Source of the DNA: Mobula birostris
Taxonomy: Eukaryota
NCBI RefSeq assembly: GCF_030028105.1
Contig: NC_092398.1
Coordinates: 28,986,424-29,050,423 of the forward strand
Direction: 5' to 3'
DNA length: 64,000 nucleotides
Below the pieces are notes generated by a model. That model was not told the DNA's origin and did not search any database. It saw nothing but the letters and a program-made list of their open reading frames with translations. Of the stretch, positions 1-64,000 are shown piece by piece (the first letter of the stretch is position 1; every line of letters starts with the position of its first letter). The position numbers and the translations under genes were made by a program.

Positions 1-69
1 TCCAACTCAGAACTCTGTACCAGCCTTCCCTCCATACCCCCTGATCCCTTTAGCCACAAGTGCCATATC

Positions 70-570
70 ATTGAGGCCTAATTTGGAGCATTGTGTGCAT
101 TTCTGGTCACCTGTCTGCAGGAATGATATCAATAAGATTGAAAGAGTGCAGAGAAAACTTATGAGGACTTGAGGACTTGAGGACCAGAGTTATTGGGAAA
201 GGTTGAATAGGTTAGGACTATACTCCCGGAGTGTAGGAGAATGAGGGGAAGATTTGATTGAGATAAACAAAATTATGAGGGGTGTAGAGAAGCTAAACGT
301 GAGCAGGCTTTTTCCGCTGAGGTTGGGCGAGACTGGAGCTGGAGTTCGTGAGTTGAGAGTTAAGGGTGAAGTGAAAGGGAACCTCAGAGGTGTTGAGAAT
401 GTGGAACAAGCTGCTATCGCAAGTGGTGGTTGTACCGTTGATTGCAATATTTAAGAGATGCACCTGGATGGGAGGAACACGGAGGGTGATAGCCCGGGCG
501 CACATCAATGGATGAGAGTACGGCATGGGCTAGATGGGCCAAAGGTCCCGTTTCTGTGCGCTATGACTCT
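70..570 (+). mobile_element. CR1 LINE 3' fragment
   Basis: Degenerate RT C-terminus (…ttggagcattgtgtgcatttctggtcacc…) and CR1 3' UTR gggctagatgggccaaagg. Confidence 0.75.
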
Positions 571-584
571 GCGCGGCGACTCAC

Positions 585-857
585 TTTTCAGGACGCTCGA
601 ACCGTTGGTGAACTTCATCATCTCCTTGGTGATGCCCTGCTGCCAGGCCTGGATCCCACTCGATCTCTCCTTGAAGTGGTTCACCTCATCTTGGCCGAGC
701 TCCTTTACCCCGTCTGTCTCAACTCCCTTGATGAAGAACATCTGGCGCTGGTAATCGTAGAAGAGGAAGGGAGAGGTGTTCGCATCGAAGACCTTGCCGT
801 TGGTTTCGGAACTCGGGCTGTAGCTGTAATACAGCCTTTCTGAGACGCTTTTAAACA
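585..857 (-). CDS. MHC alpha1-domain exon (exon 2) of a second, divergent alpha-type gene, W-category WA-like; later exons lie left of the window
   Basis: Acceptor ttctttctcactttattccaag and donor A|gtgagt bound 273 nt, phase 1 to 1, fully open: VFKSVSERLYYSYSPSSETNGKVFDANTSPFLFYDYQRQMFFIKGVETDGVKELGQDEVNHFKERSSGIQAWQQGITKEMMKFTNGSSVLK. It has the alpha1 aromatic-aromatic-D strand (FLFYD), no Cys, and a C-terminal N-glycan site; MMKFTNGS parallels MMLTNNS of the exon at 41232. Confidence 0.8.
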
Positions 858-949
858 CTTGGAATAAAGTGAGAAAGAAGTTAGGTACGGTATATGCCCA
901 CCCTTTCCTCGATCACGTCCAAAATAAATAAATTATCAAAGTACATCTA

Positions 950-1530
950 CAATCACTGGCCACATTATGAGGTACACCTGCTCGTAGTACTCAGCCAATC
1001 ACATGGCAGCAGCTCAATGCGTAAAAGCATGCAGGCATAGTCAAGAGGTTCAGTTGTTGTTCAGACCAAACATCAGAATGGGGGAAGAAATGTGATCTAA
1101 GTGACCATGGAAAGATTGTTGGTGCCAGACGGGGTGGTTGGAGCATCTGAGAAGCTGCTGATCTCCTGGGATTTTCACCTGCAACTGTCTCTGGAGCAGT
1201 GGTTCCCAACCCGGGTCCATGGGCCTCTTGATTAATGGTTGGGGTCCAATCCACAAAACAGGTTGGGAACCCCTGTTCTAGAGTTTACAGAGAATGGTGT
1301 GAAAAACAAAAACAAAAAAAAAAATCCAGCGAGCAGCAATTCTGTGGGCAAAAACGGCTTGTTAATGAGAGAGGTCAGAGGAGAATGGCCAGACTGCTTC
1401 AAGCTGACAGGAAGGCAACGGTAACTCAAATAACCACACGTTACAACTGTGGTGTGCCGAGGAGCATTTCTGAGCACGCAGCACGTTAGAGCTGGTAGTG
1501 GCTAGGCTACAGCAGCACATAAACTTAGTG
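950..1530 (+). mobile_element. Tc1-derived non-autonomous DNA element. Related copies at about 10260-10630(-), 15900-16070, 37770-37980, 49965-50885, 56580-58790, 59250-59745 and 62285-63600
   Basis: Shared termini cactcagtggccactttattaggtacacctg / ctaataaagtggccactgagtg and internal transposase remnants (RGQRRMARLLQADRKATVTQITTRYN). Confidence 0.75.
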
Positions 1531-4291
1531 GCTGTCGTGGAAATATTAACTGGGAGCACCTGAGTGACCTTGAGTTTCGTTTTAAGAGTTTATTAACGTG
1601 ATAGCATGGAGGGCCTGCAGCAGTCTCCACCGCCAACAGAGCTCTATCTTTTAGGTTATACATAGCTCACCATATACTACCCTGAGATTCATTTTCTTAC
1701 AGGCCTTCACAGTTTTGTTGAGGCCCTCCGTTGGTCGGGGACAACTCTTATTGCATCCTAGCGGTCTACATGGTATGCAAGCCAGGGCAGTCCGATATGG
1801 AGCGCAAGCTGTTGCCCCTGTCGCAAGCTTCCCCTCTCCACGCAGCCGTGAATCCAAAGGAACGGCGGAGACCGATACAGTTTGGCACCAGCCAGTGTTA
1901 CTCGTGTTGCCAATCAGCATTTAACTCAACGTGGGGACTCCAGCTCCGGATAATTCCTCGGAGTTTATTCCCGAAGCCAGGCCCATGACTGGGTATAGCC
2001 TCAAGGCAGCAGAGGTTTGAGGGTTTTCCTTCTACAAGATGAGCTGCCAGCCATATCTGCCCGATGCGACTGGTTTTAAGGTGCCAGTCACCGCCTTTGC
2101 CCCTTCTCCAATGGGTTTAGTAGCTAAGCCACACGTGAAAGCCAAGAGCTGGACTTGGTTGTCAGAGGCTATTGGAGGCGCACGACATTGGGAGCATTTA
2201 ATAGATAGTAGGAGCTTATTCCCACTACCTCTCCGGGCTATGGGAACTTTAAGGAGCCTAATGAAAAGCTACAAAGACTTACCAACAACCAATGTGCAAA
2301 AATGAAAAGTGTGCAAATGCAACAAAAAAAGATAAATTAGTAAATAAATAATACTGAGAACATGTAGAGTCCTTGAAAGTGAGTCTGCAGGTTCTGGAGT
2401 TCAGTGCGGAGGTGAGTGAAGTATGCAGACTCACACCCAAATAAACAAAATTCCATTCTTCATACTGTACAGCCCTTGAGGGAGAGACGCTGGCCAAGAA
2501 CATTTGCTCCTCTTTCAGCGAGGCCGGACTGTTGTTAGTCATTCAGGGACCAACAGACATACATTTGGACCAGAATCTGGCCATTCGGCCCATTGAGTCT
2601 GCTCTGCCATTCCATTGTGGCTGACTTATTATCCGTCTCAATCCCATTCTCCGGCCTTCTCCTCGTAACCTTTGACACGCTTGCTAATCAGGCCCCTGGT
2701 TTATATATACTCAATGACTTGGCGTCCACAGCCCCATCTATGGCAATGGATTCCACAGATTCATCACCCTCTGGATAAAGAAATTCTTTTCAATATCCAA
2801 TAGGTTTCAGTGAGACCTCTCCCCCCTCCACCCACCTAATTCTTCTAAACTCCAGCGAGAACAGGCCTAGAGCCATCAAATGTGCCTCGCACACTAATCC
2901 GTTCATTCCCAGGATAATTCCTGTGAAGTTCCCCTGGATCCTCTCCAATGCCAGCACATCATTTCTTCGAGAAAAGGCCCAAGATAGTTCCATTTTCCCA
3001 GGCCAGACCTGCCTAATGCAAGGGAGCATAACGTTAAAGTGACTGGAGATGTTAGGGTCAAAAACAGATGGTGTGTCCTAGCTATCGTTATACGCAAGCC
3101 AGGGCAGTACGATATGGGGAGCAAGCTGTTACCCATGTAACAGGCTTCCCCTCTCTATGCAGCTGATGAATCCAAAGGAACGGCAGACGCCGATACCGTC
3201 AGGCATCAGCAGCACCGCAGGCGTTGCCAGTCAGTGGTGAAATCAACGTCGGACTGTCTTACAGACTCCAGCTCTGGATTTTCCCCTTGGGGTTTACTCC
3301 CCATGAGTGGGTATAGCCCCAAGGCAGCAGAGGTTTGAGATCAGAGTTTTCCTTCTCCTATACCAGCTTCCAATGTCGGCCGATGAACCCCATCTGCCTG
3401 ATGCAGAGGTAGTTTTTTAAACACAGACTATGTGGGTATGTGGAACACCCTGCCAGGGGCAATGGGAGAGGAAAATTCCTTAGAGACATTTAAGGAACTC
3501 AGATGGATGATAGAAAAATGGAGGGTTACATAGAAGAGAAGGGTTAGATTGACCTTAGAGTAGGTTAAAACCTTGTCACAAAGTTGTACGTCGAAGGACC
3601 TGTTCTGTTCTAAGTTCCATTTTCTATGTAAAGATGCTCACGATACTCCAGTTGCGGTCTGACCAATGCAGATTCAGGCATTGGTCAGACGACACTTGGA
3701 GTATCCAGGGAGCCCAAGTTCGAACCTGACCCAAGGTGCTACCTATGCGGAGTTTGCAAGCTCACTTTGTAAACACTTTGGCTTCTGCAGGATGCTCCAG
3801 AGGCCCCTGCACGTCCCCAAGCTGTGTTAACGAGCCAATGTAGTATCAAGGATCAATATTATTCACCATAGCTATCTGTTAGTCTCGTGAGACCATGGAT
3901 TTGCGCCTTGGAAGGTCTCCAGGGCGCAGACCTGGGCAAGGTTGTATGGGAGACCGGTAGTTGCCCATGCTGCAAGTCTGCCCTCTCCACACCCACTGAT
4001 GTTGTCCAAGGGAAGGGCACTGGAGCCGATGCAGCTTGGCACCAGTGTCGTCGCAGAGCAATGTGTGATTAAGTGCCTTGCTCGAGGAAACAACATAAAG
4101 ACATAAATACCAGCATGTATTTACAATGTAAACAGCATTATAAAATTGGTTTGAAGTGTTTGCAGTGCAATGATGGAGTAATAGATAGAGGGGATTGGGG
4201 AGGTAACTAGAATGGTGGATCAGATTAACTGCCTGGGGGAAGAAACTTTTAAGATGGCGTGAACGCTTTGTTTTAATAATCGTAGAGCGCT

Positions 4292-6975
4292 TTCCACAAG
4301 AATAAATTACTGTTTTATTTCTATTCTGACATGTTCCAGCACCTGTACAACGAACTTTGCTAATTGCCATGATGTTAATCTTTAGTCTTTCCATTTCATT
4401 TATCACATTGTCCAATCTTCCTGCTTGATATAGGGTTCTGACATTCCATTCTAATGGGGTAGGAATTCTTATGGATGAAAACATGGTAAAAATTGTTTTA
4501 GGACATTGGACAATATCAGAAAGAGTGCTCCTTGTTAGATTCAGATTTAGCAGTTATACAGGTATATGGAACAAATGAGGATATACTGTAGATAAATTCA
4601 ACGAAGAGCTTGAACAAGCAAAGAATGGATGCAAATCTCAAGATATAGTTATTGTCATGGGAGATCTAAGTGCTAAAGTAGGACAAGGTGCAGATGGAAA
4701 TACCATAGGAAAATTTGGACTAGGGAAAAGAAATGAAAGAGGTGAGAAATGGGTAGAATGGTGCAAGATGAATAATCAGGTCATTACGAATACCTACTTT
4801 AAAAACCATCCAAGAGGCTTGTGGACTTGGAAAAGTCCAGGTGATAACACTAGAAATCAAATTGACTTTATTACTATAAACCAAAGATTTAGAAACCCAG
4901 TGACTCAATGCAAAACATATCCAGGTGCAGTCTGTAATAGTGACCATAACCCAGTAATATGTCATGTAAAAGTAAAACTTAAAAAAGTAAAGATGCAAAA
5001 TCCTGAACAATCCCTTGACTGTTTCCTATTAACTAAAGAAGAGAACTTAAGACAAAAATTTACAATTGAAGTAAGGAATAGATTTCATAGTCTAGAAATA
5101 GACTCTGTTGAAGATGATCGCCATCATGTAGAAATGAAGTTTAACTCTCCAAAGGATGCCTTGGTAGAATCAGCAAAGGCAGTGATTCCTAAAAAAAAAG
5201 AAAAAAAAACAAAGAATAAATGGATGATAGATGAAATCAAAAATCTATGGAATGAAGGAGACAGAATAAAGCAAAAAAAGTTAAAAGTTTATGTCAAAAA
5301 GCCAAAGAAGAATGGTTAAACTAGAAATGTGAGCAGCTAGAAAGAATTTCTATTACTGATCCAAAAAGGTTATATCAACAAATCAAGAATATCACTGGTA
5401 AAAAGCTCCTCTGTTCTTCAGGTGGATGTTTGAAAGCAAAGGACGGTACCATTATCATGGAAAAAGATGAGATTATGAACAGATGGACTGAGTATATTCA
5501 GGAATTGTTTGAAGATGATCCAGACGAAAAAACAGAAATTAAGAAGAACATGCAAGGTCCAAGTATTTTAAAATCTGAAGTTCGTAATGCAATAAATAAG
5601 ATGAAGAAAGGAAAGGCAGCAGGTCCTGATGAATTAGTAATAGAACAAATTATCACCCTTGAAGATTATGGAATTGAAAAACTTACTGATTTAATCAATG
5701 ACATTTATCAGACTGGAATAATAACAGAAGAGATGATAAAATCTGTATTCATCACTCTTCCTAAGAAACCTGGAGCAATAGAATGTGAATTACATAGAAC
5801 CATAAGTTTAATGAGTCGTATCACCAAGATAATTCTAAGAATTTTGATGACAAGAGGTAAAAATAAGATACAAGCTGAAACAGGTAAAGAACAATGTGGT
5901 TTTATGAAAGACAAAGGTACAAGAAACGCGATATTGACGTTAAGGATACTATCAGAACGAGCTGTTCAAGTGCAAAAAGATTTGTTTGTTTGTTTTATTG
6001 ACTGCACAAAAGCATTTGATAAAGTAAAGCACATAAGTTATTTGAAATATTACAGAAAACTCTAGATCTAGATTCAAAAGTCCTCGCCTAATCAGAAATC
6101 TGTACTGGGAGCAAGCTGCCGCTGTAGGAATAGATGGTGAAGTAACTCACTTTACGCAAATCAAGAGAGGCATTAGACAGGGGTGTGTTTTCTCCCCTGA
6201 TTTGATTAATGTGTACTGTGAAACAATATTACAAAAAATGAGACATCTTGGGAATCAAAGTTGGCACTGAAAACATCAATAATTTCAGATATGCGGATGA
6301 CATTATGTTAATTACAAGTACTGAGGAAGAACTACAAAACTTAATTAATATAGTTGTTGAAGAAAGTGCAAAAATGGGTCTATCTATCAATTGCAAAAAG
6401 ACAGAAAGTATGGTGATATCCAAAAAGAAGGCGAATCCTATCTGCAGGCTGAGAATAAATGGGGAAGACATAAAACAAGTACAGAACTTTTGCTGCTTTG
6501 GAAGCTGGGTGACATCAGATGGCAGGTGTGACATGGACATCAAAAGGAGAATAGGGATGGCAAAAGACACCTTTACAAGAATGAAGAGTATACTGACCAA
6601 TACTAAATGAATTGTAGCAGAAGAGATGTGGTTTCTGAAGAGGATGCAAAGAATATCATGGACGAAACGAATATCTAACAAGGATTTCATGAACAGAGCA
6701 AGTACAAAAAGAGAAATAATGTATGAGAACATGAAAAGGCAAGGTGCCTTCATTGTACATGTGATTCGGAAAGAGGAGTTAGAATACACGGTAATTATGG
6801 GAAAGATTGAAGGGAAGAAAGCAAGAGGAAGGCAAAGACAAATGATGATGGAGACAGCAGCCAGAAAACTAGAAATGAATACCAATGAATTGATCCACTT
6901 GACCCGAAACAGGAGCGTGTGGGCCATGGCAGTCAAAGCTCAAACTGGGCATGGCACCTGATGATGATGATGAGA
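4292..6975 (+). mobile_element. RTE-clade LINE, near full-length ORF with frameshifts and an inverted 5' end
   Basis: APE endonuclease (MGDLSAKVG…SDHNPV), RT (GKAAGPD, RTISLMS, RYADD), (TGA)n tail. 4292-4451 encodes the N-terminal WNVRTLYQAG segment on the opposite strand. Confidence 0.92.
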
Positions 6976-9780
6976 GCGCTTTCCAGAGGGGAGTGTCTGC
7001 GTTGATTTTTCCTGCACACTTCTTTGTCCTGGACACGCACAAGTCCTTCTTTGTCCTGGACACGCACAAGTCCTGCAGTGATGGTAAACTGCAGCCAATG
7101 CAGGGCACTGCCCTCACAGTTCGCTGTAGTTTTTCTTTACTGTGCGAGGATACAGTGAGATGATTGCCAGTTACTTGTCACTGACCATCCTAACTTCTGT
7201 CGAGAGTGTCCTGGCTGGTTACATCACGGCTTCCATGCGCAGGAATACAAAAAAGCATCAGAGATTAGTGGACTCAAGCCAATGCATCACAGGCCCATCC
7301 CTTCTCACCATCAGTAGTGTTTGCCTCAGGAAAGCAACATCAAAGATTGCTGACCACTCAGGGCCACACCATCACTGCGCAGCTCCCATCGGTACTGGAG
7401 CCTGAAGTCCCACCCCACCAGGTTCAGAAACAGCGACTTCCCTTCAACCATTCGGTTCTGCAACTGACTGGCACAACTCTGATCACCACCTCGGTACAGT
7501 AACTGACCTTGATTACCGCTGGATCATGGTGTAGAAATATCTCTATTTTTCCCTTTCAGGGTTCTTTTGAAGACGCTGACCTGGAGTTACACGCTGACTT
7601 CAGTTCCTTGCGGGAATGGGACCCGCTCCCGGGGTCTCACGACTGGCCGTTATTCGTTATGCCAAGGACATGGCCTATAAGACGCGCGAGCCTTCAGGGT
7701 TCCGGGATTTCGTGGCTCTGGAGGCTGGCAGACTTGAGGTCGGTGCCTCAGCAGGAATTTGGTGTGCCGTGGGAGCACACAGAAGATCGAAAGCAGAGAG
7801 CTGGCTGCTAGCTGTGTGCCCAGAGTCCCGAGAGCTTTGGGCACAGAGCTCAGAAAAAGCGACGCAGCAGACTTTTAACACCGTAAATCAGCGAGTGGCT
7901 TTGTTATGTCTCCCCTCTCGCTGTGAAATGGGGACATCTCTTTTTCCCTCATTTGGGTGAGAGAGAGAGAGAGCCCATGGTATGTTGAATACCGGGTGAA
8001 GGAGTAGTCTTTCGGCTACTACAAGTCTGTCTGTTTATTGATGCTTTTCTGTATGCTTGAGTGCTTGGTGAGGCGTGCAGCTGCTTTTTCTCTGGTGGGG
8101 AGGGGGCCATTGCTTTGCTGCTGCTTGTGCGTAGGAGTGGGAGCTGGGGGCGGGGCTTTGGAGTTCCTCTGTATTCGTTGATGTTTGCGAAGAAAAAAGA
8201 TATTCAGGATTTATATTATATACATTTCTCTGACATTAAATATACCTTAGAGAATTGCAACCTTTCTTATATTTCCCTTGTGGTTTAACATTCTTGAGCT
8301 TGCCTTTTACGTAATCACCTGATCAGTGATTTTTCCAGCAATTACGGTATAGTGTTTCTATATTTTTCTGGAAGCTTCCTATTTTGTCATGCCACTTGAA
8401 TCCAGCTATTTATAGGTTGTTATCTCCAGTCTGAGTATGTCCTTTGTTCTATGGAATGCTGAAAGGCCTCGACAGAGTGGGTGTGGAGAGGATCTTTCCA
8501 ATGGTGGGGAGAGTCTAAGACCAGAGCACACAGCTTCAGATTGGAGGGGCGTCCTTTTTGAACGGAGATGTGGAGCAATTTCTTTAGCCAGAGAGTGGTG
8601 AGTCTGTGGAATTTTTTGCCACAGATGGCTGTGGAGACAAAGTCATCGGGTGTGTTTAAGGCAGAGGTTGATAGGTTCTTGATTAGTCAGGGCATGAAGA
8701 CAGGAGACTGGGGCTGAGAGGGAAATGGATCGGCCATGGGGAAATGGCAGAGCAGACTCGATGGGCCAAATGGCCTAATTCTGCTCCAATATCTTATGGT
8801 CTTTATTAAGTACACCCGCTTGATAATATAAATATCTAATCAGCCAATCATGTGGCAGCAGCTCACTGCATTAAAAAGTATTTTTCATAAAAGTATTTCA
8901 ACACACTGCTTTTCAAGATACTTTTTCGAACAAGCTAGTGTAAGTTTTCTTCTGTCCTGTTACACTGAAGGACCTTGAGTCAAGGCAAACTACTTATTTG
9001 ACTTTACCAGGAGTGACAGAAGGGTGTTGCAGGGTTGCCAGGGCTCCTTAGTTGTAGAGGAGAAAAGTTTAGATCAGATTATTTTGAGATTAAAAGCAAG
9101 TAATGCTCAAGCTTTAGAAGGCATTGGTCAGACCACACTTGGAGCATTGTGAACAGTTTCAGGTCCCTTAGGTGTTGGCATTAGAGAAGGTCGAGAGGAG
9201 AATGGTCCTGGGAATGAGAGGGTTAATAGATGAGGAGGATTTGATGGCTCAGGGATGTACTTGCTGGTGGTTAGAAGAATGATGGGTGATTCTCAATGAC
9301 ACCTATTGAATATTGAAAGTCTTAGAGAATGGATGTGGAGAAGATGTTTCCAATGGTGCAGGAGTCTAGGACCACAGGGCATAGAAGAAAAGAGACACTT
9401 TAGAACAGAGATGAGGAGGAATTTCTTTAGTCAGAGGGTGGTGAATCTGCAGAATTCATTGCCACAGATAGCCGTGGAGGCTGAGTCACTGGGTAGATTT
9501 AAAGTGGAGGTTGTTGTTTAGTAATGGCATTAAAGGTTACGAGGAGAAGGCAGGAGAATGGGGTTGAGAGAGTAATAAAAAGGCCAATCGAATGGCAGAG
9601 AAAATCCGATGGGCTGAATGGCTAATTGGTCTTACAACAGCCATTATTGTATGGAGACTCAATGAGCCCAACTCTGCTCCTCTGCCTTACAGTCTTATTG
9701 CCACCAATCAGCCAACTATGTAATGCAAGTCCCTTCAACATCAATAAGTTCCAAGTTTCCCCCAATGACAAAGCACTCAC

Positions 9781-9841
9781 CAATTTCCTCTCCCGTTGCC
9801 ATGGGCAATAGCAGGGCCATTAAGAAGCCAAATAGGTCCAT
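9781..9841 (-). CDS. Signal-peptide exon (exon 1) of the left MHC alpha-type gene
   Basis: cagacATGG start, MDLFGFLMALLLPMATGEEI plus one G, then a gtgagt donor. The 61-nt phase-1 exon joins exon 585-857 in frame (G+TG=Val). A TATA-like CATAAA lies about 60 nt upstream (9901-9906). Confidence 0.78.
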
Positions 9842-11899
9842 GTCTGCGGATGGCTCCTCTCTCCAGGAGCAATAAAATGATGTGAACTGGGACTGTCCAG
9901 TTTATGAACGGGGCTTAGATTTTTGCTGACTACACAAGACATGGTGAAATAATTCAACTCCACTGCTAGTGTGACGATTTTATGAGTAACATTAACTTGA
10001 CAGCTACAGTAACAATCGTTAACAGGCAGTGGTTCAACTCTCAAACCGTTCTTCATGAAGTAGCACGTTTAAATATACTTTCAGGAAATTTTAGACCTCA
10101 AGGCACAGAGCAGTTATTGAAAGTGGCGATTTTGTCAAGTTAAAGTGTTTTGTGAAGTCTGTGTTTGGATTTACTTCACAGGATGGCAGATTTTGTAACG
10201 GTATTAAATCATGCCACATTCCAATTTACTTATCACGTGTGCATTGAAACATTACTCAATGGCTACTTTATTAGATACCTGCTAAATTGTTTGTTTGTGT
10301 TCTTCTGCTGATGTTGCCCACCCTCTTCAAGGTTTGACGTGTTGTGCGTTTAGAGATACTCCTCAGCACACCACTGTTGTAACGCGTGGTTATTTGAGTT
10401 GCTGTCGCCTTCCTGTCAGCTTGAACCAGTCTGGCCATTCTCCTCTGACCTCTCTCATTAACGAGGCACTTTCGCCCACCGAGCTGCCGCTCTGTGGATG
10501 TCTTTTTTGTTTATCACACCGTTCTCTGTTAACTCTAGAGACCGTTGTGCATGAAAATCCCAGGAGATCAGCGGTCTTTGAGATACCCAAATCGTAACCA
10601 TCTGGCACCAACGGTCATTCCACAGTCAAGTAATAATTTAGATTACATGTATTTCGAGATCAGCCATTCCTCCCTTTCGAGCCGCACCACCCAGCAACCC
10701 CCGATTTAACTCTGGCCTAATCACAGGATAATTTACAATGGCCAATTAACCTACTGACCAGTAGGTCTTTTGATTGTGGGAGGTAACCAGAGCATTGGGA
10801 GGAAGCCCACGTGGTCACGGCGAGAACGTACAAACTCCTTACCAGCAGCGGCGGAAATTGAACCCGGGTCGCTGGTACCGTAAAGCGTTGCGCAGGCAGA
10901 CTTCTTCCTCTGAGTTTGGGGGAGACTAGAATTAGATATCGTGAGCTGAGGGTTGAAACGTTTAAGCGGAACGAGGGGGGATCCTCTTCACTCAGAGGGC
11001 GGTGAAAGTGTGGAACGATCTGTCAGCAGGAGTGGTGGGCGTGGGTTTGGTTGCAACACTTGGGAAATTTGGGTGGGTACATGGACGGCAGGAGTAATGG
11101 AGGGCCAAGGTCCAGGTGCAGGTTGATTGGGCTAGGCAGAATAACAGCTCGGCATGGACTAGATGGGCCAAAGGGCCTATTTCTGTACTGGATGACCACC
11201 CGTCAGCCAGAACATCCTCAAGAGGTGGTGACTCAAGAAGTTGGCATCTGTCGCCAATCTCTGGGACGTGCCCTCTTCTTGTTCATACCATTGGGAGGAG
11301 ATACAGGAGCTGAAAACACACACTCAATGATTCACAAACTTCTTCCCCTCTGTCATTGGAGTTCTGAATGGACATTGAACCCATGAGCAGCACCTCATTA
11401 TTCTCTTGTCTGGTTTTTTGCACTAGGGATGGTGGTAGAGTCAGATACATGAGGGACATTTAACACAAAGACACATGGATAAAAGAAACATGGAGGGGCG
11501 TGTGGGAGACAAAGGTTAAATTGATCTTGGAGTGGTTTGTAAGGTCAGCCCAACAATATTCACAGTACATTTATTATCAAAGTATATGTATACTTTATAC
11601 AACCTTGAAATTCGTCTCCTTATCGGCAGCCACAAAACAAAGAAACCCCAAAAAACAAATTTAAAGCAAAAGACCGACAAACACCCAATGTGGTGAGAGA
11701 ATAAAAATAACAAATTGTGCAAACAATAGAAGTAAGTAAATAGCATTTAGAATGAAAGTGAGTTCTCAGGGACGAAGCCCAGCCATTTGGCCCATCGAGT
11801 CTACTTTGTCATTCAAGCCTAGCTAATTTAGCATGCCTCTCAATCCCATTCTCCTGCCTTCTCCCCGTAACCTTTAATGTCCTTACCCATCGAGAACTT

Positions 11900-33559: not shown

Positions 33560-34700
33560 TCCCTGCTCGGTCTAAACCGTGCAGATGAGCGCCACGCAGT
33601 TACTGAAATGCTCCCGCTCACATAGCCATCGTAGCTGTGCAGCTGGAATTTTCTTTAGTGCTGACTGCGAACGTGGATTCAGTTTTATGAATTAAATCAA
33701 ACGTAAATCGAGGAACAAACTAGAAGTGGAACATGTAGATGATCTGATGAGGGCTTAAGAAGTATCTTTCATCTGGATGTGAAATTAATCTGGATGACGT
33801 TTACAAGCAAAAGATTTGTAATAAAGACAGACAAGAAAAACTTTATGAAACTCATAAGATTTTCTTTGTTGTGCTGTATTTAATTATGCCCTTCAATTAA
33901 TACATAAAATAAAATGTATATGATTCTAAAAACGCAAACATGAGAAAATCTGCAGATGCTGGAAATTCAAGCAACCACACAGAAAATGCTGGTGGAACGC
34001 AGCAGGCCAGGCAGCATTATTAGGAAGAAGTACAGTCGACATTTCGGGTCGAGACCCTTCGACAGGACTAGCAGAAAAATAGAGCCAGTAAGAGATTTGA
34101 AAGTGGAAGGGGGAGGGGGAGATCTGAAACAATAGGAGAAGACAGGAGGGGGAGGGATGAAGCCTAGAGCTGGGAGATTGAGTGGCGAAAGTGATACAGG
34201 GTTGGAGAAGGGGGAGTATCATGGGAAGGAAGCCCTTGAAAGAAAGCAGAAAAGGGAAGGGAGCATCAGAGGAAGATGGAGAACAGGTGCTTTGTACTCC
34301 CCCTTCTCCAGCCTTGAATCCCTTTTGCCAATCAACCTCCCAGCCCTTGGCTTCATCCCTCCCCATCCTGTCTTCTCCTATCATTTCGGGTCTCCCCCTC
34401 CTCCTCCCACTTTCAAATCTCTTACTATCTCTTTTCTTCCGTTAGTCCTGACGAAGGGTCTCGACCCGAAACATCGACTGTACCTCTTCCTATAGATGCT
34501 GCCTGGCCTGCTGCGTTCCACCAGCATTTTGTGTGTGTTAAATGTATGTGATTGTTCAGTTTTCATTCTAAATATTCATAGTATGTTATTTACACAAAAA
34601 AATAAAGAGCTACGCAGTTTTCAGGCCATGTAAAAATTTCCAGCTCAGAACAATGGTTGGTCCATGCAGCTGTAAAAAATATTAGAGCAAAAATTGCATC
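33560..34700 (+). mobile_element. hAT transposase 3' remnant, interrupted by a Penelope-derived repeat (33925-34540)
   Basis: ADCERGFSFMN*IK…RNKLEVEHVDDLM dimerisation-domain motif at about 33660-33755. Confidence 0.65.
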
Positions 34701-34909
34701 CAATTCACCACCCGCCACTTCCATCCAGTATACCTGAGTGCCCCCAATACCCTCTGCAGTCATCCAGCTGCCCACATCTCTGCACCCACCCAACCATCCC
34801 CATCTTCTGCAACTGTCTAGCCCTCACCCCGCCATCCTCTGCAACCACCCTGAGTGATAGATAGTTGCAGAGGATGGGAGGGATGAGGGATTGACAGTGG
34901 ACTCTTGTC

Positions 34910-35965
34910 CCCAACCTCTGTAACTGCCTATCCCTCACCCCCCATCCTCTACAACTGTCTATCCCTCACTCCTCCCATCCTCTACAACTGTCTATCCCTC
35001 ACCCCTCCCATCCTCTACAACTGTCTATCCCTCACTCCTCCCATCCTCTACAACTGTCTATCCCTCACCCCTCCCATCCTCTACAACTGTCTATCCCTCA
35101 CCCCTCCCATCCTCTACGACTGTCTATCCCTCACCCCTCCCATCCTCTACGACTGTCTATCCCTCACCCCTCCCATCCTCTACGACTGTCTATCCCTCAC
35201 CCCTCCCATCCTCTACGACTGTCTATCCCTCACCCCTCCCATCCTCTACGACTGTCTATCCCACACCCCTCCCATCCTCTACAACTGTCCATTCCTCACC
35301 CCTCCCATCCTCTACAACTGTCTATCCCTCACCCCTCCCATCCTCTACAACTGTCTATCCCTCACCCCTCCCATCCTCTACAACTGTCCATTCCTCACCC
35401 CTCCCATCCTCTACAACTGTCTATCCCTCACCCCTCCCATCCTCTACAACTGTCCATTCCTCACCCCTCCCATCCTCTACAACTGTCTATCCCTCACCCC
35501 TCCCATCCTCTACAACTGTCTATCCCTCATCCCTCCCATCCTCTACAACTGTCTATCCCTCACCCCTCCCATCCTCTACAACTGTCTATCCCTTACCCCT
35601 CCCATCCTCTACAACTGTCCATCCCTCATCCCTCCCATCCTCTACAACTGTCTATCCCTCACTCCTCCCATCCTCTACAACTGTCCATCCCTCACCCCTC
35701 CCATCCTCTACAACTGTCTATCCCTCACCCCTCCCATCCTCTACAACTGTCTATCCTTCACCCCTCCCATCCTCTACAACTGTCCATCCCTCACCCCTCC
35801 CATCCTCTACAACTGTCTATCCCTCACCCCTCCCATCCTCTGCAACTTCCTATCCCTCACCCCTCCCATCCTCTACAACTGTCCATCCCTCATCCCTCCC
35901 ATCCTCTACAACTGTCTATCCCTCACTCCTCCCATCCTCTACAACTATCTGTCCCTCATCCGCCC
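34910..35965. repeat. 33-bp minisatellite (VNTR), about 31-32 units
   Basis: Unit ctcacccctcccatcctctacaactgtctatcc, with variants (gac/aac, ccattc, atc). It produces the spurious LTPPILYNCLS repeat ORF. Confidence 0.95.
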
Positions 35966-35984
35966 TTCACTACACCTGCCCCCC

Positions 35985-36520
35985 CCATCCCGAGTCAGCC
36001 AGGCACCGCTGATTGGCTGCCGCGTCTTCCCGCCAGACAGCCCACCCCCACCACCACACTACTCCCTCCACCGGGCGCGCGCATCACCGCCGGCGGGCCG
36101 CTCGCGCTCCCCGGGCGCGCGCCATCACAGACGTCGGGCCAGTCGCGCTCCCGCCGGAGGCTTGGCTTGGGTGGAGGAGGAGGAGACTGAGGTCGGTGGG
36201 CGGGTTGAATGGCGGCGGCGTCTCCTCCTCCTCCCGCCGCTCTTTTGCTTTCGGGACGGTTTCTGCCATGGGTCGTTATCCCGCTGCTTGGGCGCTCCTC
36301 CTGCTCCTCCGCCCCTGTTCGGGGACTACCTACAAAGTGGCCGGTGAGTCGATTCCTGTCGCTGCGATCGCCGCCCGGTCAACTTGCTGTAAAGTTGTTG
36401 CTAAGGGTGGGATCTTGCTGAGTAGACGCCCCTGGGGTCATCAACCGTGTCTTGGGGTGGGGAGGGCGGTAGCGTTCGGATCTTGCGAAGCACATTCTAC
36501 TTGGCGTCTTGCTGGCTTGG
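35985..36520 (+). promoter_or_regulatory. CpG island/promoter of WA with an inverted CCAAT (Y-box) CTGATTGG at 36009-36016
   Basis: Dense CpG and GC boxes against a CpG-poor background; CTGATTGG preceded by an AP-1/X2-like CGAGTCA at 35991-35997; spans exon 1. Confidence 0.65.
36268..36343 (+). CDS. WA: MHC W-category alpha chain, exon 1 (signal peptide)
   Basis: Kozak gccATGg; MGRYPAAWALLLLLRPCSGTTYKVA plus G; donor gtgagt; 76 nt, phase 1; lies inside a CpG island. Confidence 0.88.
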
Positions 36521-41231: not shown

Positions 41232-41495
41232 AGACAGACACATTGGAAGTCACCATCTTCTTTGCAGATGACCCCAGCCTACCCAAGGGGGCAGCCGAGT
41301 TGAAGACTCAGGATAGAAGCATTGGTTACTATGACACCACGTTACCGAGAGCTCAGTTTCACTTGGCTAACTTAGAACACTTCCGTAAAACTATTGATAG
41401 CCTGTTGGAAGAGAATAAGGACAACACAATCGCATTGGCAAAGAGCCTGATGGATCAGGCGATGATGTTAACCAACAACTCTCTCCCCCCAAACG
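41232..41495 (+). CDS. WA: MHC W-category alpha chain, exon 2 (alpha1 domain)
   Basis: tatcctttcag acceptor, G|gtgagt donor, 264 nt, phase 1-1: ETDTLEVTIFFADDPSLPKGAAELKTQDRSIGYYDTTLPRAQFHLANLEHFRKTIDSLLEENKDNTIALAKSLMDQAMMLTNNSLPPN, with a C-terminal NNS glycan site typical of alpha1 domains. Confidence 0.88.
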
Positions 41496-43477: not shown

Positions 43478-43759
43478 AAATCGGTGAGCTCTATCTGTAC
43501 TCAGAGAAACCAGCTGTCTTCGGGAAGGTAAACACTTTGACCTGTTTCGTCAGCGGCATTTTCCCACCAACCCTAACTGTAACGTTACAGAAGAACGCGC
43601 AACCTGTCAATGGCGAAGTTAACTCCTCACACCTCTCATTTGGCAAAGATTGGCGATTTCATGTGCTCCACTACACATACATCCAGCCAGCAGAAGGTGA
43701 CATATACTCCTGTAGAGTGCTCCATAAAATCAGCAAAGAGGAAAAAGTAATTTACTGGG
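43478..43759 (+). CDS. WA: MHC W-category alpha chain, exon 3 (alpha2 Ig-C1 domain, beta2-microglobulin-like)
   Basis: tttgtccttttag acceptor, G|gtaaga donor, canonical 282 nt: EIGELYLYSEKPAVFGKVNTLTCFVSGIFPPTLTVTLQKNAQPVNGEVNSSHLSFGKDWRFHVLHYTYIQPAEGDIYSCRVLHKISKEEKVIYW. Two Ig cysteines; residues match b2m Y10, L54, F56 and W60. Confidence 0.93.
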
Positions 43760-60784: not shown

Positions 60785-63673
60785 CTAGGAAAATCAGTAA
60801 AACTGAGATCAGAACATATTACAGCACAGAGCATTTTAGCCACAGTTGTTGGTCAGAAGATATTACAGCAGAGAGCAACTTGGCCACAGTTGTTTGCATT
60901 TTATTGTCTTCACCAGACTTCTCTAGTCTTGGTCCAATACAACAGCAGAGAATGGCCCCTTGTCGAAGAAGGATGTGCTGGGTTTGAACCCAGGTCACTG
61001 GCAGTTAAAGTGTTATGTTACCTGCCAGTTAGACTGCTGGAATGTGCCGGTTGTCTTATGAGAAAGGGTCAGACAGGCTGGGCTTGTATCCACTGAGGTC
61101 AGAAGTGTCCTAATTGGCTTATTACGATACACCGAGGGAGAGTAAAAAGTATTTGTGAGCCTGATATCCAAACCATCATTCCATATATACAAGGTAGTTC
61201 AAAAGCAAGTACTTGGGAGAACTCGTGGAGGGTTCCCTTAGTGTTAATTTGTCGATTGAATCAATGGTAAGGGAGGAAAATGCAATGTCAGCTTTCCTTT
61301 CCTATGGACTTGAATATGAAAGCAGGAATCTATTGCCGGGCCTCATTAGGCACTGATCAAATCCTCACTTGAAGTATTATGAGCAGTTTTGGGCCTCTTA
61401 TCTAAGAAAGGATGTACCGGAATTAGAGAGGGCCCAGAGGAGGTTCATGAGAATCATCCCAGGAAGGAAAGTACGAGCCAAGAGAAAACACAAATCCGAG
61501 GTGCAAAGGGAATTGGAGGTCCCCGAACAGGATTCCCGAAAGGTTAATTTGCAGGCTGAGTCAGGAAGGCAAGTGCAGTGTTACCACTCTTTTATGCTGA
61601 GGCTTCATAAGAGATTGGTCTTACGCAGTTTGAGTATTGGAGAGGGTCCGAATGAGGATAACGAGAATGATCCTGACAATGCACGGGTTAACATATGATG
61701 AGAATTTGATGGCTCTGGGCCTGTACTTGGTGGAATTTAGCAGAATGATGGGGGTGGATGTGTCATTCAATCCTATCAAATACTGAAAAGCCTAGACAGA
61801 GTGGACGTGGAGAGGATGTTTCCTCTAATGGGGGAGTCGAGCACCAGAGGACACAGCCTCAGAATAGAAGGACATCCTTTTAGAACAGAGATGAGAAGGA
61901 ATTTCTTTAGGTAAGTCCCTGAATTCATTGCCACAGACTGCTCTGGAGGCCACATCACTGGGTAGATTTAAAGATGAAGTTGAAAGGTTCTTGATTATTA
62001 AGGGTGTCAAAGGTTATGGGGAGAAGGCAGAAATACGGGGTTGAGTGGATAATAAATTAGCCATGAAATGCCTAAGCAGGTTCAATAGGCCAAATGGACT
62101 AATTCTGCTCCTATAATTTATGATCTTATGGTGATCAGCATGGTCCACTTGGACAGAAGTGCACATATCTGTATTACTCCATGACTGATGTAGAAAGTGG
62201 AGATACTGATCCTCACCAGGTTACAGCAGGATTCTGTTCCTGTGAAACAATCGTAACCTGAATGGGTTGAAAATGTGAACCAGATCACCCAATCATGTGG
62301 CAGCAACTCAATGCATCAAAGCATGCAGACATGGCCAAGAGGTCCAGTTGTTGTTCAGACCAAACATCAGATTGGGGAAGAAATGTGATCTGAGTGACTT
62401 TCACCATGGAACCTAGTCAAGATGGTGCCTGTGTACAACGTCCCGCTGGTCAACGTCTATCAGATAGTCAACGAATCTGTTTATTTCACTTCTTTTACGT
62501 CTGCTTTTCATCTGAAATGTGTTTCTGGAACTGTTAAGAGCCTGTGATTTACAGTTTAGAGATCAATTGAGTGACCTAGTGCTTTGCTGTCTCCGGGAAG
62601 ATTCCAGGAAGCTCAAACAGCCTCAAGGCGAAACAGCTTAAAGATAAGGCAGGGGCCAATGATCGACTCCATTTTGCTGAGTAAAGTGTTGAGGAAGATT
62701 GAATCTGAGGCAACTGCTTGCCTTTTGATTGCAGGGATGGACTTCTCTGCTGTGTGGTGCCTTTCACTCTTTGTTGTTGGAGGGCAGGCCTCCGCGTTTG
62801 AGTGTTCTCTCTCTCTCTCTCTCTCTCTCGCTCGCTGTTGGTCAGAGGATATTACCAGGTTCTGAATTTATGAATTGGACTATGGACTTCCAGTCTTATG
62901 ATTTTTATATTCTATGTTTTCCCCTGTTCTTTCACCTTGTTATTGCAGAGCATGTTTTGTTAGTTTTTTTTTTACATGAGGGAGTGGGATTTAGATGGGT
63001 TGATGTTCTTGTAGCATTTTGATTTTTTTGTGCAGGGTGGGGGTTTGATGTTCCTGTTCAGTTTTGATTTTTTTGTGCAGTGGAGGGGTGGGGGTTTGAT
63101 GTTTATCTTTGAATGACTTCCATGGATTTCTTTTTTTCATGGCTATCTGGAGAAATGAATCTCAGAGTTGAATAATGAACACATAGTTTGATAATAAATG
63201 AACTTTTGAACGATGCTGATGCACGACGGGGTGGTTTGAGTATCTCAGAAATTGTTGAGCTCCCGGGATTTTCAGGGACAAGTCTCGAGAGTTTAAAGTG
63301 AACAGTGTGAAAAACAAACAAAAAAAAATCATTTACTGAGTGGCAGTTGTGGGCAAAAGTGCCTTGTTAGTGAGATTTCAGAGGAGAATGGCCAGACTGG
63401 TTCACGCTAACAGGAACACGACAGTAACTGAAAGAACCGCCTGATACAATGTTGGTGTGCGGAAGAGCGTCACTGAACGCAAACATTTCCAACCTTGAAG
63501 CGGATGAGCTACAGCAGCATAAGACCACAACCTTACACTCAATGGTCACTTTATTATGTAGAGGAGGTGCCTGATAAAGTGGCCACTGAGTGTATAATAT
63601 AGTGTTGGACAGAGTGTGAACCAGATCATCACCAGTACACTGCACCCCAAATTACTCAGACTCTGAGCCTTAC

Positions 63674-63955
63674 CCCAAACTGCATGCAGCTTGTCAGGGA
63701 CGCTCAAATGCTCGATTTCACAAGTGTAAGTGTCACCCTTCCCGGGGTCAATTTCGACCTGTAGCCGGACTTGGAACGTCCTATCCCAGTTGGGTAAAAT
63801 TCTCGTCATTAGCACTTCCTGATCGATCGCCACACCATTCCGCAGCCACGTTGCATGGATTTTCTTGGGATAAAATCCATGCACTTGGCATGTCAGGGCC
63901 AAGGTATTCTCTCTGTTCTTCATGTGTCTTGAGGTTATTGTGATAGTTGGCTTCG
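63674..63955 (-). CDS. WB: MHC beta-chain (W-category WB-like) beta2 Ig-C1 exon; beta1 and leader exons lie right of the window
   Basis: ttctgtccactgcag acceptor, G|gtaagg donor, 282 nt, phase 1-1: AKPTITITSRHMKNRENTLALTCQVHGFYPKKIHATWLRNGVAIDQEVLMTRILPNWDRTFQVRLQVEIDPGKGDTYTCEIEHLSVPDKLHAVW. A class I alpha3 exon cannot be excluded without the upstream exons. Confidence 0.82.
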
Positions 63956-64000
63956 CTGCAGTGGACAGAAACACATTGAAGCTGAACTTGGTTACGGGAT

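What the first reader, a model, noticed from the sequence alone, without database searches (positions are those of the whole stretch)
585..9841. Second, highly divergent alpha-type MHC gene with a 9-kb first intron
Leader exon 9781-9841 and exon 585-857 join in frame across an 8.9-kb intron full of transposons. The alpha1 domain resembles the WA alpha1 only weakly (FLFYD vs IGYYD; MMKFTNGS vs MMLTNNS), which implies an old paralogue. In an ungapped alignment on the FD/YD motif it has Val at the position of class I V25, a b2m-contact residue, where the other WA has Glu. It may be a separate W lineage or an unrecognised non-classical class I gene.
Basis: partly seen in the sequence, partly recalled or inferred. 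Interest (0 to 1): 0.74.

Follow-up and report, generated by a model that had tools for sequence, protein, structure and literature searches.

The report
Manta ray WA_DS5-type MHC alpha gene
The two exons are real and are the front half of a manta-ray "W-category" MHC alpha-chain gene of the WA_DS5 lineage described in 2021, so this is one more copy of a known family and not a new lineage or a hidden class I gene.

Summary
On the minus strand, a 61-nt signal-peptide exon (9841-9781) and a 273-nt phase-1/phase-1 exon (857-585) have consensus splice sites. They join in frame across an 8,923-bp intron rich in transposons.

The same leader, junction Val and alpha1 appear in Mobula birostris XP_072102696.1. 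The leader matches 20/20 and alpha1 85/90.

The family is the WA_DS5 lineage of Okamura et al. 2021 (PMC8713811); the Triakis WA_DS5 sequences are direct hits. The window's other WA (41232-41495) is WA_DS10-like. The weak resemblance between the two (17% identity, E 1.9) therefore reflects two published lineages found in both sharks and rays.

The class I reading is rejected. The 12 full-length relatives I read are all leader-alpha1-Ig-TM.

The sawfish orthologue has identical exon sizes, collinear intron remnants and a conserved ~250-370-bp upstream block. The alpha1 model folds as an MHC membrane-distal domain.

Two things remain open:
- No WB partner lies next to this copy, unlike the sawfish and stingray orthologues.
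- No protein model matching this copy turned up in the collection. Its Ig and TM exons lie off the window, so it may be a disabled duplicate.

The scan has already followed up a WA_DS5 gene about 424-436 kb to the left. Verdict: new member of a known kind, low interest.

The parts
9781..9841 (-). Exon 1: start codon, 20-codon signal peptide plus one base (phase 1), donor GTGAGT
   Evidence: Sequence read. Only consensus-donor leader candidate. 20/20 identical to residues 1-20 of XP_072102696.1. Same 61-nt length as the sawfish exon 1, L001:10001-10061.
9842..10210 (-). Conserved 5' flank (5' UTR and proximal promoter block)
   Evidence: BLASTN finds 71% identity over window 10093-9726 against L001 9745-10122, so about 250 bp upstream of the ATG is conserved. 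The MAFFT alignment suggests similarity out to about 370 bp; it is 79% identical overall, but that figure includes the leader exon. Similarity decays about 40 nt into intron 1. The alpha1 coding exon itself is about 80% identical, so the flank is only slightly less conserved than coding sequence.
858..9780 (-). Intron 1, 8,923 bp, expanded by transposon insertions
   Evidence: RVT_1 hits at 5430-6065 and 6248-6610 on the + strand. 39% of the intron is repeated elsewhere in the window. Collinear remnants of the ancestral intron: 9078-8901, 3731-3703 and 2524-2497 match L001 10138-10310, 13645-13673 and 13704-13731. The sawfish intron 1 is 3,845 bp.
585..857 (-). Exon 2: alpha1 (membrane-distal) domain, 273 nt, phase 1 to phase 1, two N-glycosylation sequons (NTS, NGS)
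   Evidence: 85/90 identical to XP_072102696.1; tblastn identity 63% to Triakis WA_DS5_n4 and 48% to WA_DS5_n1. Sister to the Mobula protein in the tree (98/86). Keeps all 7 invariant and 9 near-invariant family positions. AlphaFold model has four main strands plus a long helix, and every listed Foldseek PDB hit is an MHC chain.
1..584 (-). Start of intron 2; the Ig, TM and tail exons lie beyond the window's left edge
   Evidence: No DS5-type Ig or TM match anywhere in the window. The region carries dispersed repeats shared with L001.
4657..6961 (+). Decayed LINE (reverse-transcriptase ORFs), antisense to the gene, inside intron 1
   Evidence: ORFs; RVT_1. One search shows near-identical ORF translations at about 29.7-30.9 kb, and the 5400-6973 stretch has copies elsewhere in the window.

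Best explanation
These are exons 1 and 2 of a manta/devil-ray W-category MHC alpha-chain gene of the WA_DS5 lineage.

Shown: a signal-peptide exon and an alpha1 exon with class II-alpha-type phases. They are spliced across a first intron that transposon insertions enlarged from a few kb to 8.9 kb. Upstream lies a block conserved with the sawfish orthologue.

Inferred from orthologues: the gene continues left of the window with a 282-nt Ig exon that carries the family's signature Trp, then a connecting-peptide/TM/cytoplasmic exon and a short tail exon. The product would be a ~255-aa type I membrane glycoprotein. Following the published salamander WA/WB experiments, such a chain would pair with a WB chain (in sharks and in sawfish the WB_Nds5L type) into a class II-shaped heterodimer with class I-like domain contacts. 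The strong conservation (dN/dS 0.06 against sawfish) fits a non-classical, non-polymorphic role.

This copy is most likely a recent paralogue of the annotated Mobula gene XP_072102696.1. It has no WB partner beside it, and I found no matching protein model in the collection. I therefore put roughly 55% on a disabled or truncated 3' half and 45% on an intact gene.
For: - Exons, phases and splice sites.
- Homologues: an HMMER scan of 1.84 billion representatives returned only four proteins, all from sharks or rays. The family search recovers the Triakis 'MHC class II alpha chain like' proteins, which are the published WA_DS5 n1/n4, and XP_072102696.1.
- Lineage: Dataset S1 rows place the motif ...SVSERLYYS...ETNGHIF...PFLFYD in WA_DS5, and the other window gene in WA_DS10.
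- Tree: window alpha1 is sister to Mobula P0008, then Hypanus, then Pristis. End branches are 0.022 and 0.032.
- Sawfish locus L001: identical 61- and 273-nt exons, a 282-nt Ig exon, collinear intron remnants and a conserved upstream block.
- Constraint: dN 0.10, dS 1.66. All conserved family positions are kept.
- Fold: MHC membrane-distal domain.
- WA/WB heterodimer and surface expression: PMC8713811, section read.
Against: - Only 2 of about 5 coding exons are in the window. The defining Ig-domain Trp and the TM could not be read for this copy.
- No head-to-head WB gene is present. No WB_Nds5L-type beta1 exon and no third C1-set exon lie anywhere in the window. Pristis and Hypanus orthologues both have a partner about 4 kb upstream.
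- No protein carrying this exact alpha1 is in the 5.8-billion-protein collection. The 90% cluster of XP_072102696.1 has a single member.
- An unchecked first-reader note on the neighbouring window says the Ig exon runs into a SINE.
- No transcript evidence could be obtained.
- Pfam and a PDB sequence profile do not recognise alpha1, so the MHC assignment rests on family context and predicted fold.
Confidence: 0.9

Rival explanations
1. A pseudogene or truncated duplicate. A partial duplication copied the promoter, leader, alpha1 and perhaps the Ig exon of the WA_DS5 gene without its WB partner, and the 3' half is broken (for example by a SINE in or after the Ig exon). The intact-looking 5' exons then make no membrane-anchored chain.
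For: No WB partner in the window, whereas orthologues have one. No matching protein model found in the collection. The neighbouring-window note reports the Ig exon running into a SINE (unchecked). Other W genes of this genome were reported as decayed (unchecked).
Against: Leader, alpha1, both donors, the acceptor and the conserved upstream block are all intact. This copy has changed no more than its annotated relative since they split (2 versus 3 derived residues by outgroup comparison; branches 0.022 versus 0.032). All conserved positions are kept.
Confidence: 0.5
2. Not a second copy at all. The window shows the same locus as XP_072102696.1 from another haplotype, individual or Mobula species, and the five alpha1 differences are allelic or orthologous.
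For: The XP_072102696.1 gene spans 11,676 bp and has no called neighbour within 10 kb on either side. That fits a long first intron and the absence of a WB partner seen here. The leader is identical.
Against: Earlier follow-ups place an annotated WA_DS5 gene, head-to-head with a WB gene, 424-436 kb to the left in this same genome, with a similar ~11.9-kb span (unchecked). The protein is not masked as one the window encodes. W-category genes are reported to lack high allelic polymorphism, which makes 5/90 differences between alleles less likely.
Confidence: 0.25
3. [quoted passage not shown]
For: Foldseek's top hits to the alpha1 model are class I heavy chains. Val sits at the class I V25-equivalent position.
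Against: All relatives, up to 94% identical in alpha1, have alpha1 followed directly by one Ig domain and a TM. The sawfish gene has no alpha2-type exon. Class I-like contact residues are the published hallmark of the W category. Class II chains also appear among the fold hits.
Confidence: 0.01

Closest known systems
Mobula birostris XP_072102696.1, named by NCBI 'RLA class II histocompatibility antigen, DP alpha-1 chain-like' (255 aa)
   Same: Identical 20-residue leader, same junction Val, alpha1 85/90 identical, sister in the alpha1 tree. Long gene span of 11.7 kb.
   Different: Five alpha1 residues differ. By outgroup comparison, K and V are derived here, and H, Q and T are derived in the annotated protein. 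Whether it is another locus or the same one could not be settled, and the 3' exons of the window copy were not seen.
Banded houndshark WA_DS5 (n4 and n1 sequences; BBJ00839.1, BBJ00836.1), Okamura et al. 2021, PMC8713811
   Same: Same lineage. Alpha1 is 63% (n4 type) and 48% (n1 type) identical by tblastn, with shared motifs and the same position-30 I/V. Class II-alpha exon plan.
   Different: This is a ray copy; the paper's batoid material was little skate. The first intron is much larger. No adjacent WB partner, whereas the published arrangement is head-to-head WA_DS5L/WB_Nds5L.
Pristis pectinata WA_DS5-like gene (XP_051865087.1; locus L001)
   Same: Exon 1 is 61 nt and exon 2 is 273 nt, as here. 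Alpha1 is 82% identical. The upstream block is conserved and intron remnants are collinear.
   Different: Intron 1 is 3.8 kb there against 8.9 kb here. The sawfish has a WB_Nds5L-type gene head-to-head about 3.9 kb upstream; the window has none.
The window's own WA_DS10-like gene (leader 36268-36343, alpha1 41232-41495, Ig 43478-43759)
   Same: Same category (WA), same exon phases, long first intron (about 4.9 kb).
   Different: Alpha1 is only 17% identical (E 1.9). It has Glu rather than Val/Ile at position 30 and sits on a very long branch in the tree. It is a different published lineage.
Classical MHC class II alpha chains (e.g. HLA-DRA)
   Same: Leader/alpha1/Ig/TM exon plan, phase-1 introns, an N-glycosylation sequon near the end of alpha1, and the MHC fold.
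   Different: No Pfam match of any kind, including the class II alpha family, and no PDB sequence match. The W category carries class I-type interdomain residues and a beta2-microglobulin-like Ig domain.

Membership tests
W-category MHC alpha chain (WA), WA_DS5 lineage | Alpha1 sequence homologous to published WA_DS5 sequences | tested here: met
   tblastn E 6e-34 (63% identity) to BBJ00839.1 and E 1e-25 to BBJ00836.1. Dataset S1 motifs match. Nested among ray WA_DS5-like sequences in the tree.
W-category MHC alpha chain (WA), WA_DS5 lineage | Class II alpha-type gene plan: separate leader exon, then a phase-1/phase-1 alpha1 exon | tested here: met
   61-nt and 273-nt exons with consensus splice sites, identical in length to the sawfish orthologue's.
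W-category MHC alpha chain (WA), WA_DS5 lineage | Ig-like alpha2 domain with the signature Trp (W61) plus Y8 and L55, beta2-microglobulin-like | not testable with these tools
   The exon lies left of the window. Related proteins carry ...HIY... and ...DWTF.... The criterion is from PMC8713811.
W-category MHC alpha chain (WA), WA_DS5 lineage | Connecting peptide, transmembrane and cytoplasmic region | not testable with these tools
   Off the window. Present in all full-length relatives I read. DNA of the Mobula locus could not be fetched.
W-category MHC alpha chain (WA), WA_DS5 lineage | Hydrophobic V/I at alpha1 position 30 (HLA-A2 V25), the class I-type contact to the Ig domain | tested here: met
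   Val in ...NGKVFD.... Position assigned from Dataset S1 and the SI legend.
W-category MHC alpha chain (WA), WA_DS5 lineage | Head-to-head WB partner gene (WB_Nds5L type) | tested here: not met
   No WB_Nds5L beta1 match and no further C1-set exon in the 54 kb upstream. A partner is present in Pristis and Hypanus. This is a feature of the locus, not of the protein family.
W-category MHC alpha chain (WA), WA_DS5 lineage | MHC membrane-distal fold (beta strands followed by a long helix) | tested here: met
   AlphaFold2 mean pLDDT 75, strands 4-47 and helix 55-83. All 50 listed Foldseek PDB hits are MHC class I, class II or MR1 chains, with TM 0.41-0.62 normalised by the query and weak E-values of about 0.07-0.2.
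MHC class I heavy chain (classical or non-classical) | Alpha1, alpha2 (two Cys) and alpha3 in one chain | tested here: not met
   Judged from orthologues and paralogues: alpha1 is followed directly by one Ig domain and a TM. The window copy's own downstream exons were not seen.
Conventional MHC class II alpha chain | Recognisable class II alpha N-terminal domain | tested here: not met
   No Pfam family at E up to 10 for alpha1. No PDB chain at E up to 10 with the family profile.

The most novel reading that the evidence does not exclude
A partner-less WA_DS5 duplicate keeps its promoter, leader and alpha1 under constraint but has lost its membrane anchor. It would then make a soluble alpha1-Ig chain. 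That would be a living parallel to the step proposed for the origin of beta2-microglobulin from a WA-like alpha chain. It would also be part of a manta-specific expansion of the W cluster over several Mb.
Probability: 0.08. Interest if true: 0.55.

Novelty: new member of a known kind. Interest (0 to 1): 0.2.

Why it matters
W-category genes are the proposed link between MHC class II and class I, and they are almost invisible in annotation. NCBI names this family variously as class II alpha-like, class II beta-like or beta-2-microglobulin-like.

Correct labelling of the DS5 and DS10 copies helps anyone mapping the ray W cluster. A solo WA_DS5 copy with an intact 5' half is a small data point on how these pairs duplicate and decay. 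Nothing here changes the picture given in 2021.

Tried and rejected
- **Sequence-profile searches on alpha1.** Pfam gave no family. A PDB sequence search with the 22-sequence family profile gave nothing at E up to 10.
- **Word-index protein search with the 90-aa exon alone.** No candidates, because of the tool's length window. The full HMMER scan and searches with full-length relatives were needed.
- **Fetching Mobula and Hypanus locus DNA.** I therefore could not read the exons left of the window, could not compute dN/dS between the two Mobula copies, and could not decide between same locus and paralogue.
- **Alternative leader exons between 858 and 20000.** The other hydrophobic candidates lie antisense in the LINE or lack a usable donor.
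- **WB partner search.** Searches with the sawfish WB_Nds5L beta1 and with C1-set exons found nothing. The fossil beta1 at about 31.2-31.5 kb is on the minus strand with stops, and belongs with the DS10 gene.
- **Class I reading.** Rejected from the architecture of all relatives.
- **Scripted rebuild of the sawfish CDS.** Failed because my exon-4 search range was too narrow. I set the boundaries by eye; exon 4 is approximate.
Full report
**What is in the sequence.** On the minus strand, 9841-9781 reads ATG plus 20 codons (a hydrophobic signal peptide) plus one base, followed by GTGAGT. At 857-585 there is a 273-nt exon behind a pyrimidine-rich acceptor. It is open in the phase-1 frame and ends ...AAA A|GTGAGT. 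The split codon is G|TG, giving Val. I scanned every ATG-started, phase-1, GT-ended candidate on this strand between 858 and 20000. This was the only hydrophobic one with a consensus donor; the others lie antisense inside a LINE or have poor donors. The window has no N runs.

**What the exons encode.** Pfam does not recognise the 90-residue translation, and it does not recognise the alpha1 of the window's other WA gene either. An HMMER scan of 1.84 billion representative proteins gave only four hits, all from sharks or rays. A search with the full-length skate hit gave the whole family. It includes the two Triakis scyllium "MHC class II alpha chain like" proteins, BBJ00836.1 and BBJ00839.1, and Mobula birostris XP_072102696.1 (P0008). 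P0008 starts with exactly the window's 20-residue leader, then Val, then an alpha1 that is 85/90 identical to the window's. The stingray and sawfish proteins use the same join.

**Which family.** Okamura et al. 2021 (PMC8713811) describe three WA lineages in cartilaginous fish: WA_DS5, WA_DS10 and WA_Nds3L. In the great white shark each is paired head-to-head with a WB gene, giving the pairs DS5L/Nds5L, DS10L/DS1L and Nds3L/DS3L.
- In their Dataset S1, the WA_DS5 rows (houndshark n4, spiny dogfish) carry the same motifs as the window exon: ...SVSERLYYS...ETNGHIF...PFLFYD....
- The WA_DS10 rows (for example little skate) match the window's other alpha1 at 41232-41495...FFA.DDPSLP...GYYDTTL....
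- The two window genes are 17% identical in alpha1, E 1.9. In the tree the DS10 alpha1 sits on a branch of about 5 changes per site.
- Both lineages occur in sharks and in batoids, so their split predates that divergence, which the paper's SI puts at about 281 My.

Position 30 of Dataset S1 is HLA-A2 V25, the contact to beta2-microglobulin L55. It is I or V in WA_DS5 and E in WA_DS10.

**Placement and constraint.** In a maximum-likelihood tree of 22 DS5-type alpha1 domains, the window exon is sister to Mobula P0008 (98/86), then Hypanus (97/95), then Pristis. End branches are short and similar, 0.022 versus 0.032. The exon keeps all 7 invariant and 9 near-invariant positions of the family. Comparing the outgroups in the same alignment, two of the five differences from P0008 arose on the window's side and three on P0008's side. 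Against the sawfish exon, dN is 0.10 and dS 1.66, giving a ratio of 0.06. This lineage's alpha1 is strongly conserved, which fits the paper's statement that W genes are not highly polymorphic.

**Fold.** An AlphaFold2 model built from the family alignment (mean pLDDT 75) shows four main strands and a long helix. All 50 listed Foldseek matches in the PDB are MHC class I, class II or MR1 chains. TM-scores are 0.41-0.62 normalised by the query, and E-values are weak, about 0.07-0.2. A sequence profile finds nothing in the PDB. The MHC assignment therefore rests on family architecture plus predicted fold.

**Comparison with an orthologous locus.** The sawfish gene (L001) has coding exons of 61, 273, 282, about 112 and 37 nt: leader, alpha1, Ig, CP/TM/CY and tail.
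- The first two exon sizes equal the window's.
- BLASTN finds about 250 bp upstream of the ATG conserved (71% identity over 10093-9726). The MAFFT alignment suggests similarity out to about 370 bp. Similarity fades about 40 nt into the intron.
- Small collinear intron remnants survive. Window 9078-8901, 3731-3703 and 2524-2497 match L001 10138-10310, 13645-13673 and 13704-13731. In the window the last two are pushed 2.8 and 1.6 kb away from the alpha1 exon.
- Intron 1 is 3,845 bp in sawfish and 8,923 bp here. It holds a decayed LINE with reverse-transcriptase ORFs, and 39% of it recurs elsewhere in the window.

The "9-kb intron full of transposons" is real. It is an insertion-swollen version of an ordinary intron. 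The window's DS10 gene also has a 4.9-kb first intron.

**What is unusual or unresolved.**
- *No WB partner.* The sawfish and stingray orthologues each have a ~295-aa C1-set gene head-to-head about 4 kb upstream. In sawfish its beta1 is of the WB_Nds5L type. The window has no such beta1. Its only C1-set exons are those of the DS10 gene (about 43.5 kb) and of a WB gene at about 63.7-63.95 kb.
- *No matching protein model.* None turned up in the protein collection.
- *3' exons unseen.* The Ig, TM and tail exons lie left of the window, and I could not fetch that DNA. An unchecked first-reader note on the neighbouring window says the Ig exon is there but runs into a SINE.
- *Another copy nearby.* Earlier follow-ups of this scan place an annotated WA_DS5 gene with a WB partner 424-436 kb to the left.

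I therefore think this is a recent partner-less duplicate, about even odds intact or disabled. About 25% remains on it being the XP_072102696.1 locus itself seen in another haplotype or species. That gene's 11.7-kb span and its lack of called neighbours fit either reading.

**How it would work if intact.** This part is inferred, not shown here. The product would be a ~255-aa type I membrane glycoprotein. Its alpha1 would form half of a groove-like platform with a WB beta1. Its Ig domain would contact the platform through the signature Trp, as beta2-microglobulin does in class I. Salamander WA and WB reach the cell surface only together. The ligand and the function are unknown for the whole category.

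**Verdict.** It is a new member of a known kind and of low interest. The small open point is whether a solo copy is still used.

Noticed in passing
window 36268-36343, 41232-41495, 43478-43759 (+): The window's other WA gene matches the published WA_DS10-like rows (little skate) and has a 4.9-kb first intron. The broken beta1 at about 31.2-31.5 kb (GYDGKD motif, surrounded by stops) is on the minus strand, head-to-head with it.
   Followed up: partly
window 63546-63974 (-): A C1-set exon of a WB-type gene near the right edge. Its N-terminal stretch resembles the WB_DS1-like rows of Dataset S2 (AKP.ITITS...). The rest of that gene was not examined.
   Followed up: no
L001:14407-14550 (+): The sawfish WA_DS5-like gene carries a partial second Ig-like fragment inside intron 2, 59% identical to residues 104-150 of its own protein. 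It looks like a relic of an exon duplication.
   Followed up: no
proteins P0011/P0013 and P0028/P0029 (Triakis, Mustelus): WA_DS5 has two old alpha1 types, houndshark n1-like and n4-like, that share near-identical leader, Ig and TM parts. In Mustelus asterias both types have a 114,253-bp longest contig, which may be the same contig, so they look like separate loci rather than alleles. Rays other than skates carry the n4 type. This could reflect exon exchange or concerted evolution of the 3' half.
   Followed up: partly
window 34905-36347 (+): A long tandem array, reading as repeated ...PPILYNCLSLT... in one frame, lies just upstream of the DS10 leader. GC skew is strongly negative there (-0.51 for 34001-36000).
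   Followed up: no
annotation names: Public annotation names members of this one family variously as class II alpha-like, class II beta-like, B-L beta-like and beta-2-microglobulin-like. The Ig domain is evidently what drives the automatic names.
   Followed up: no
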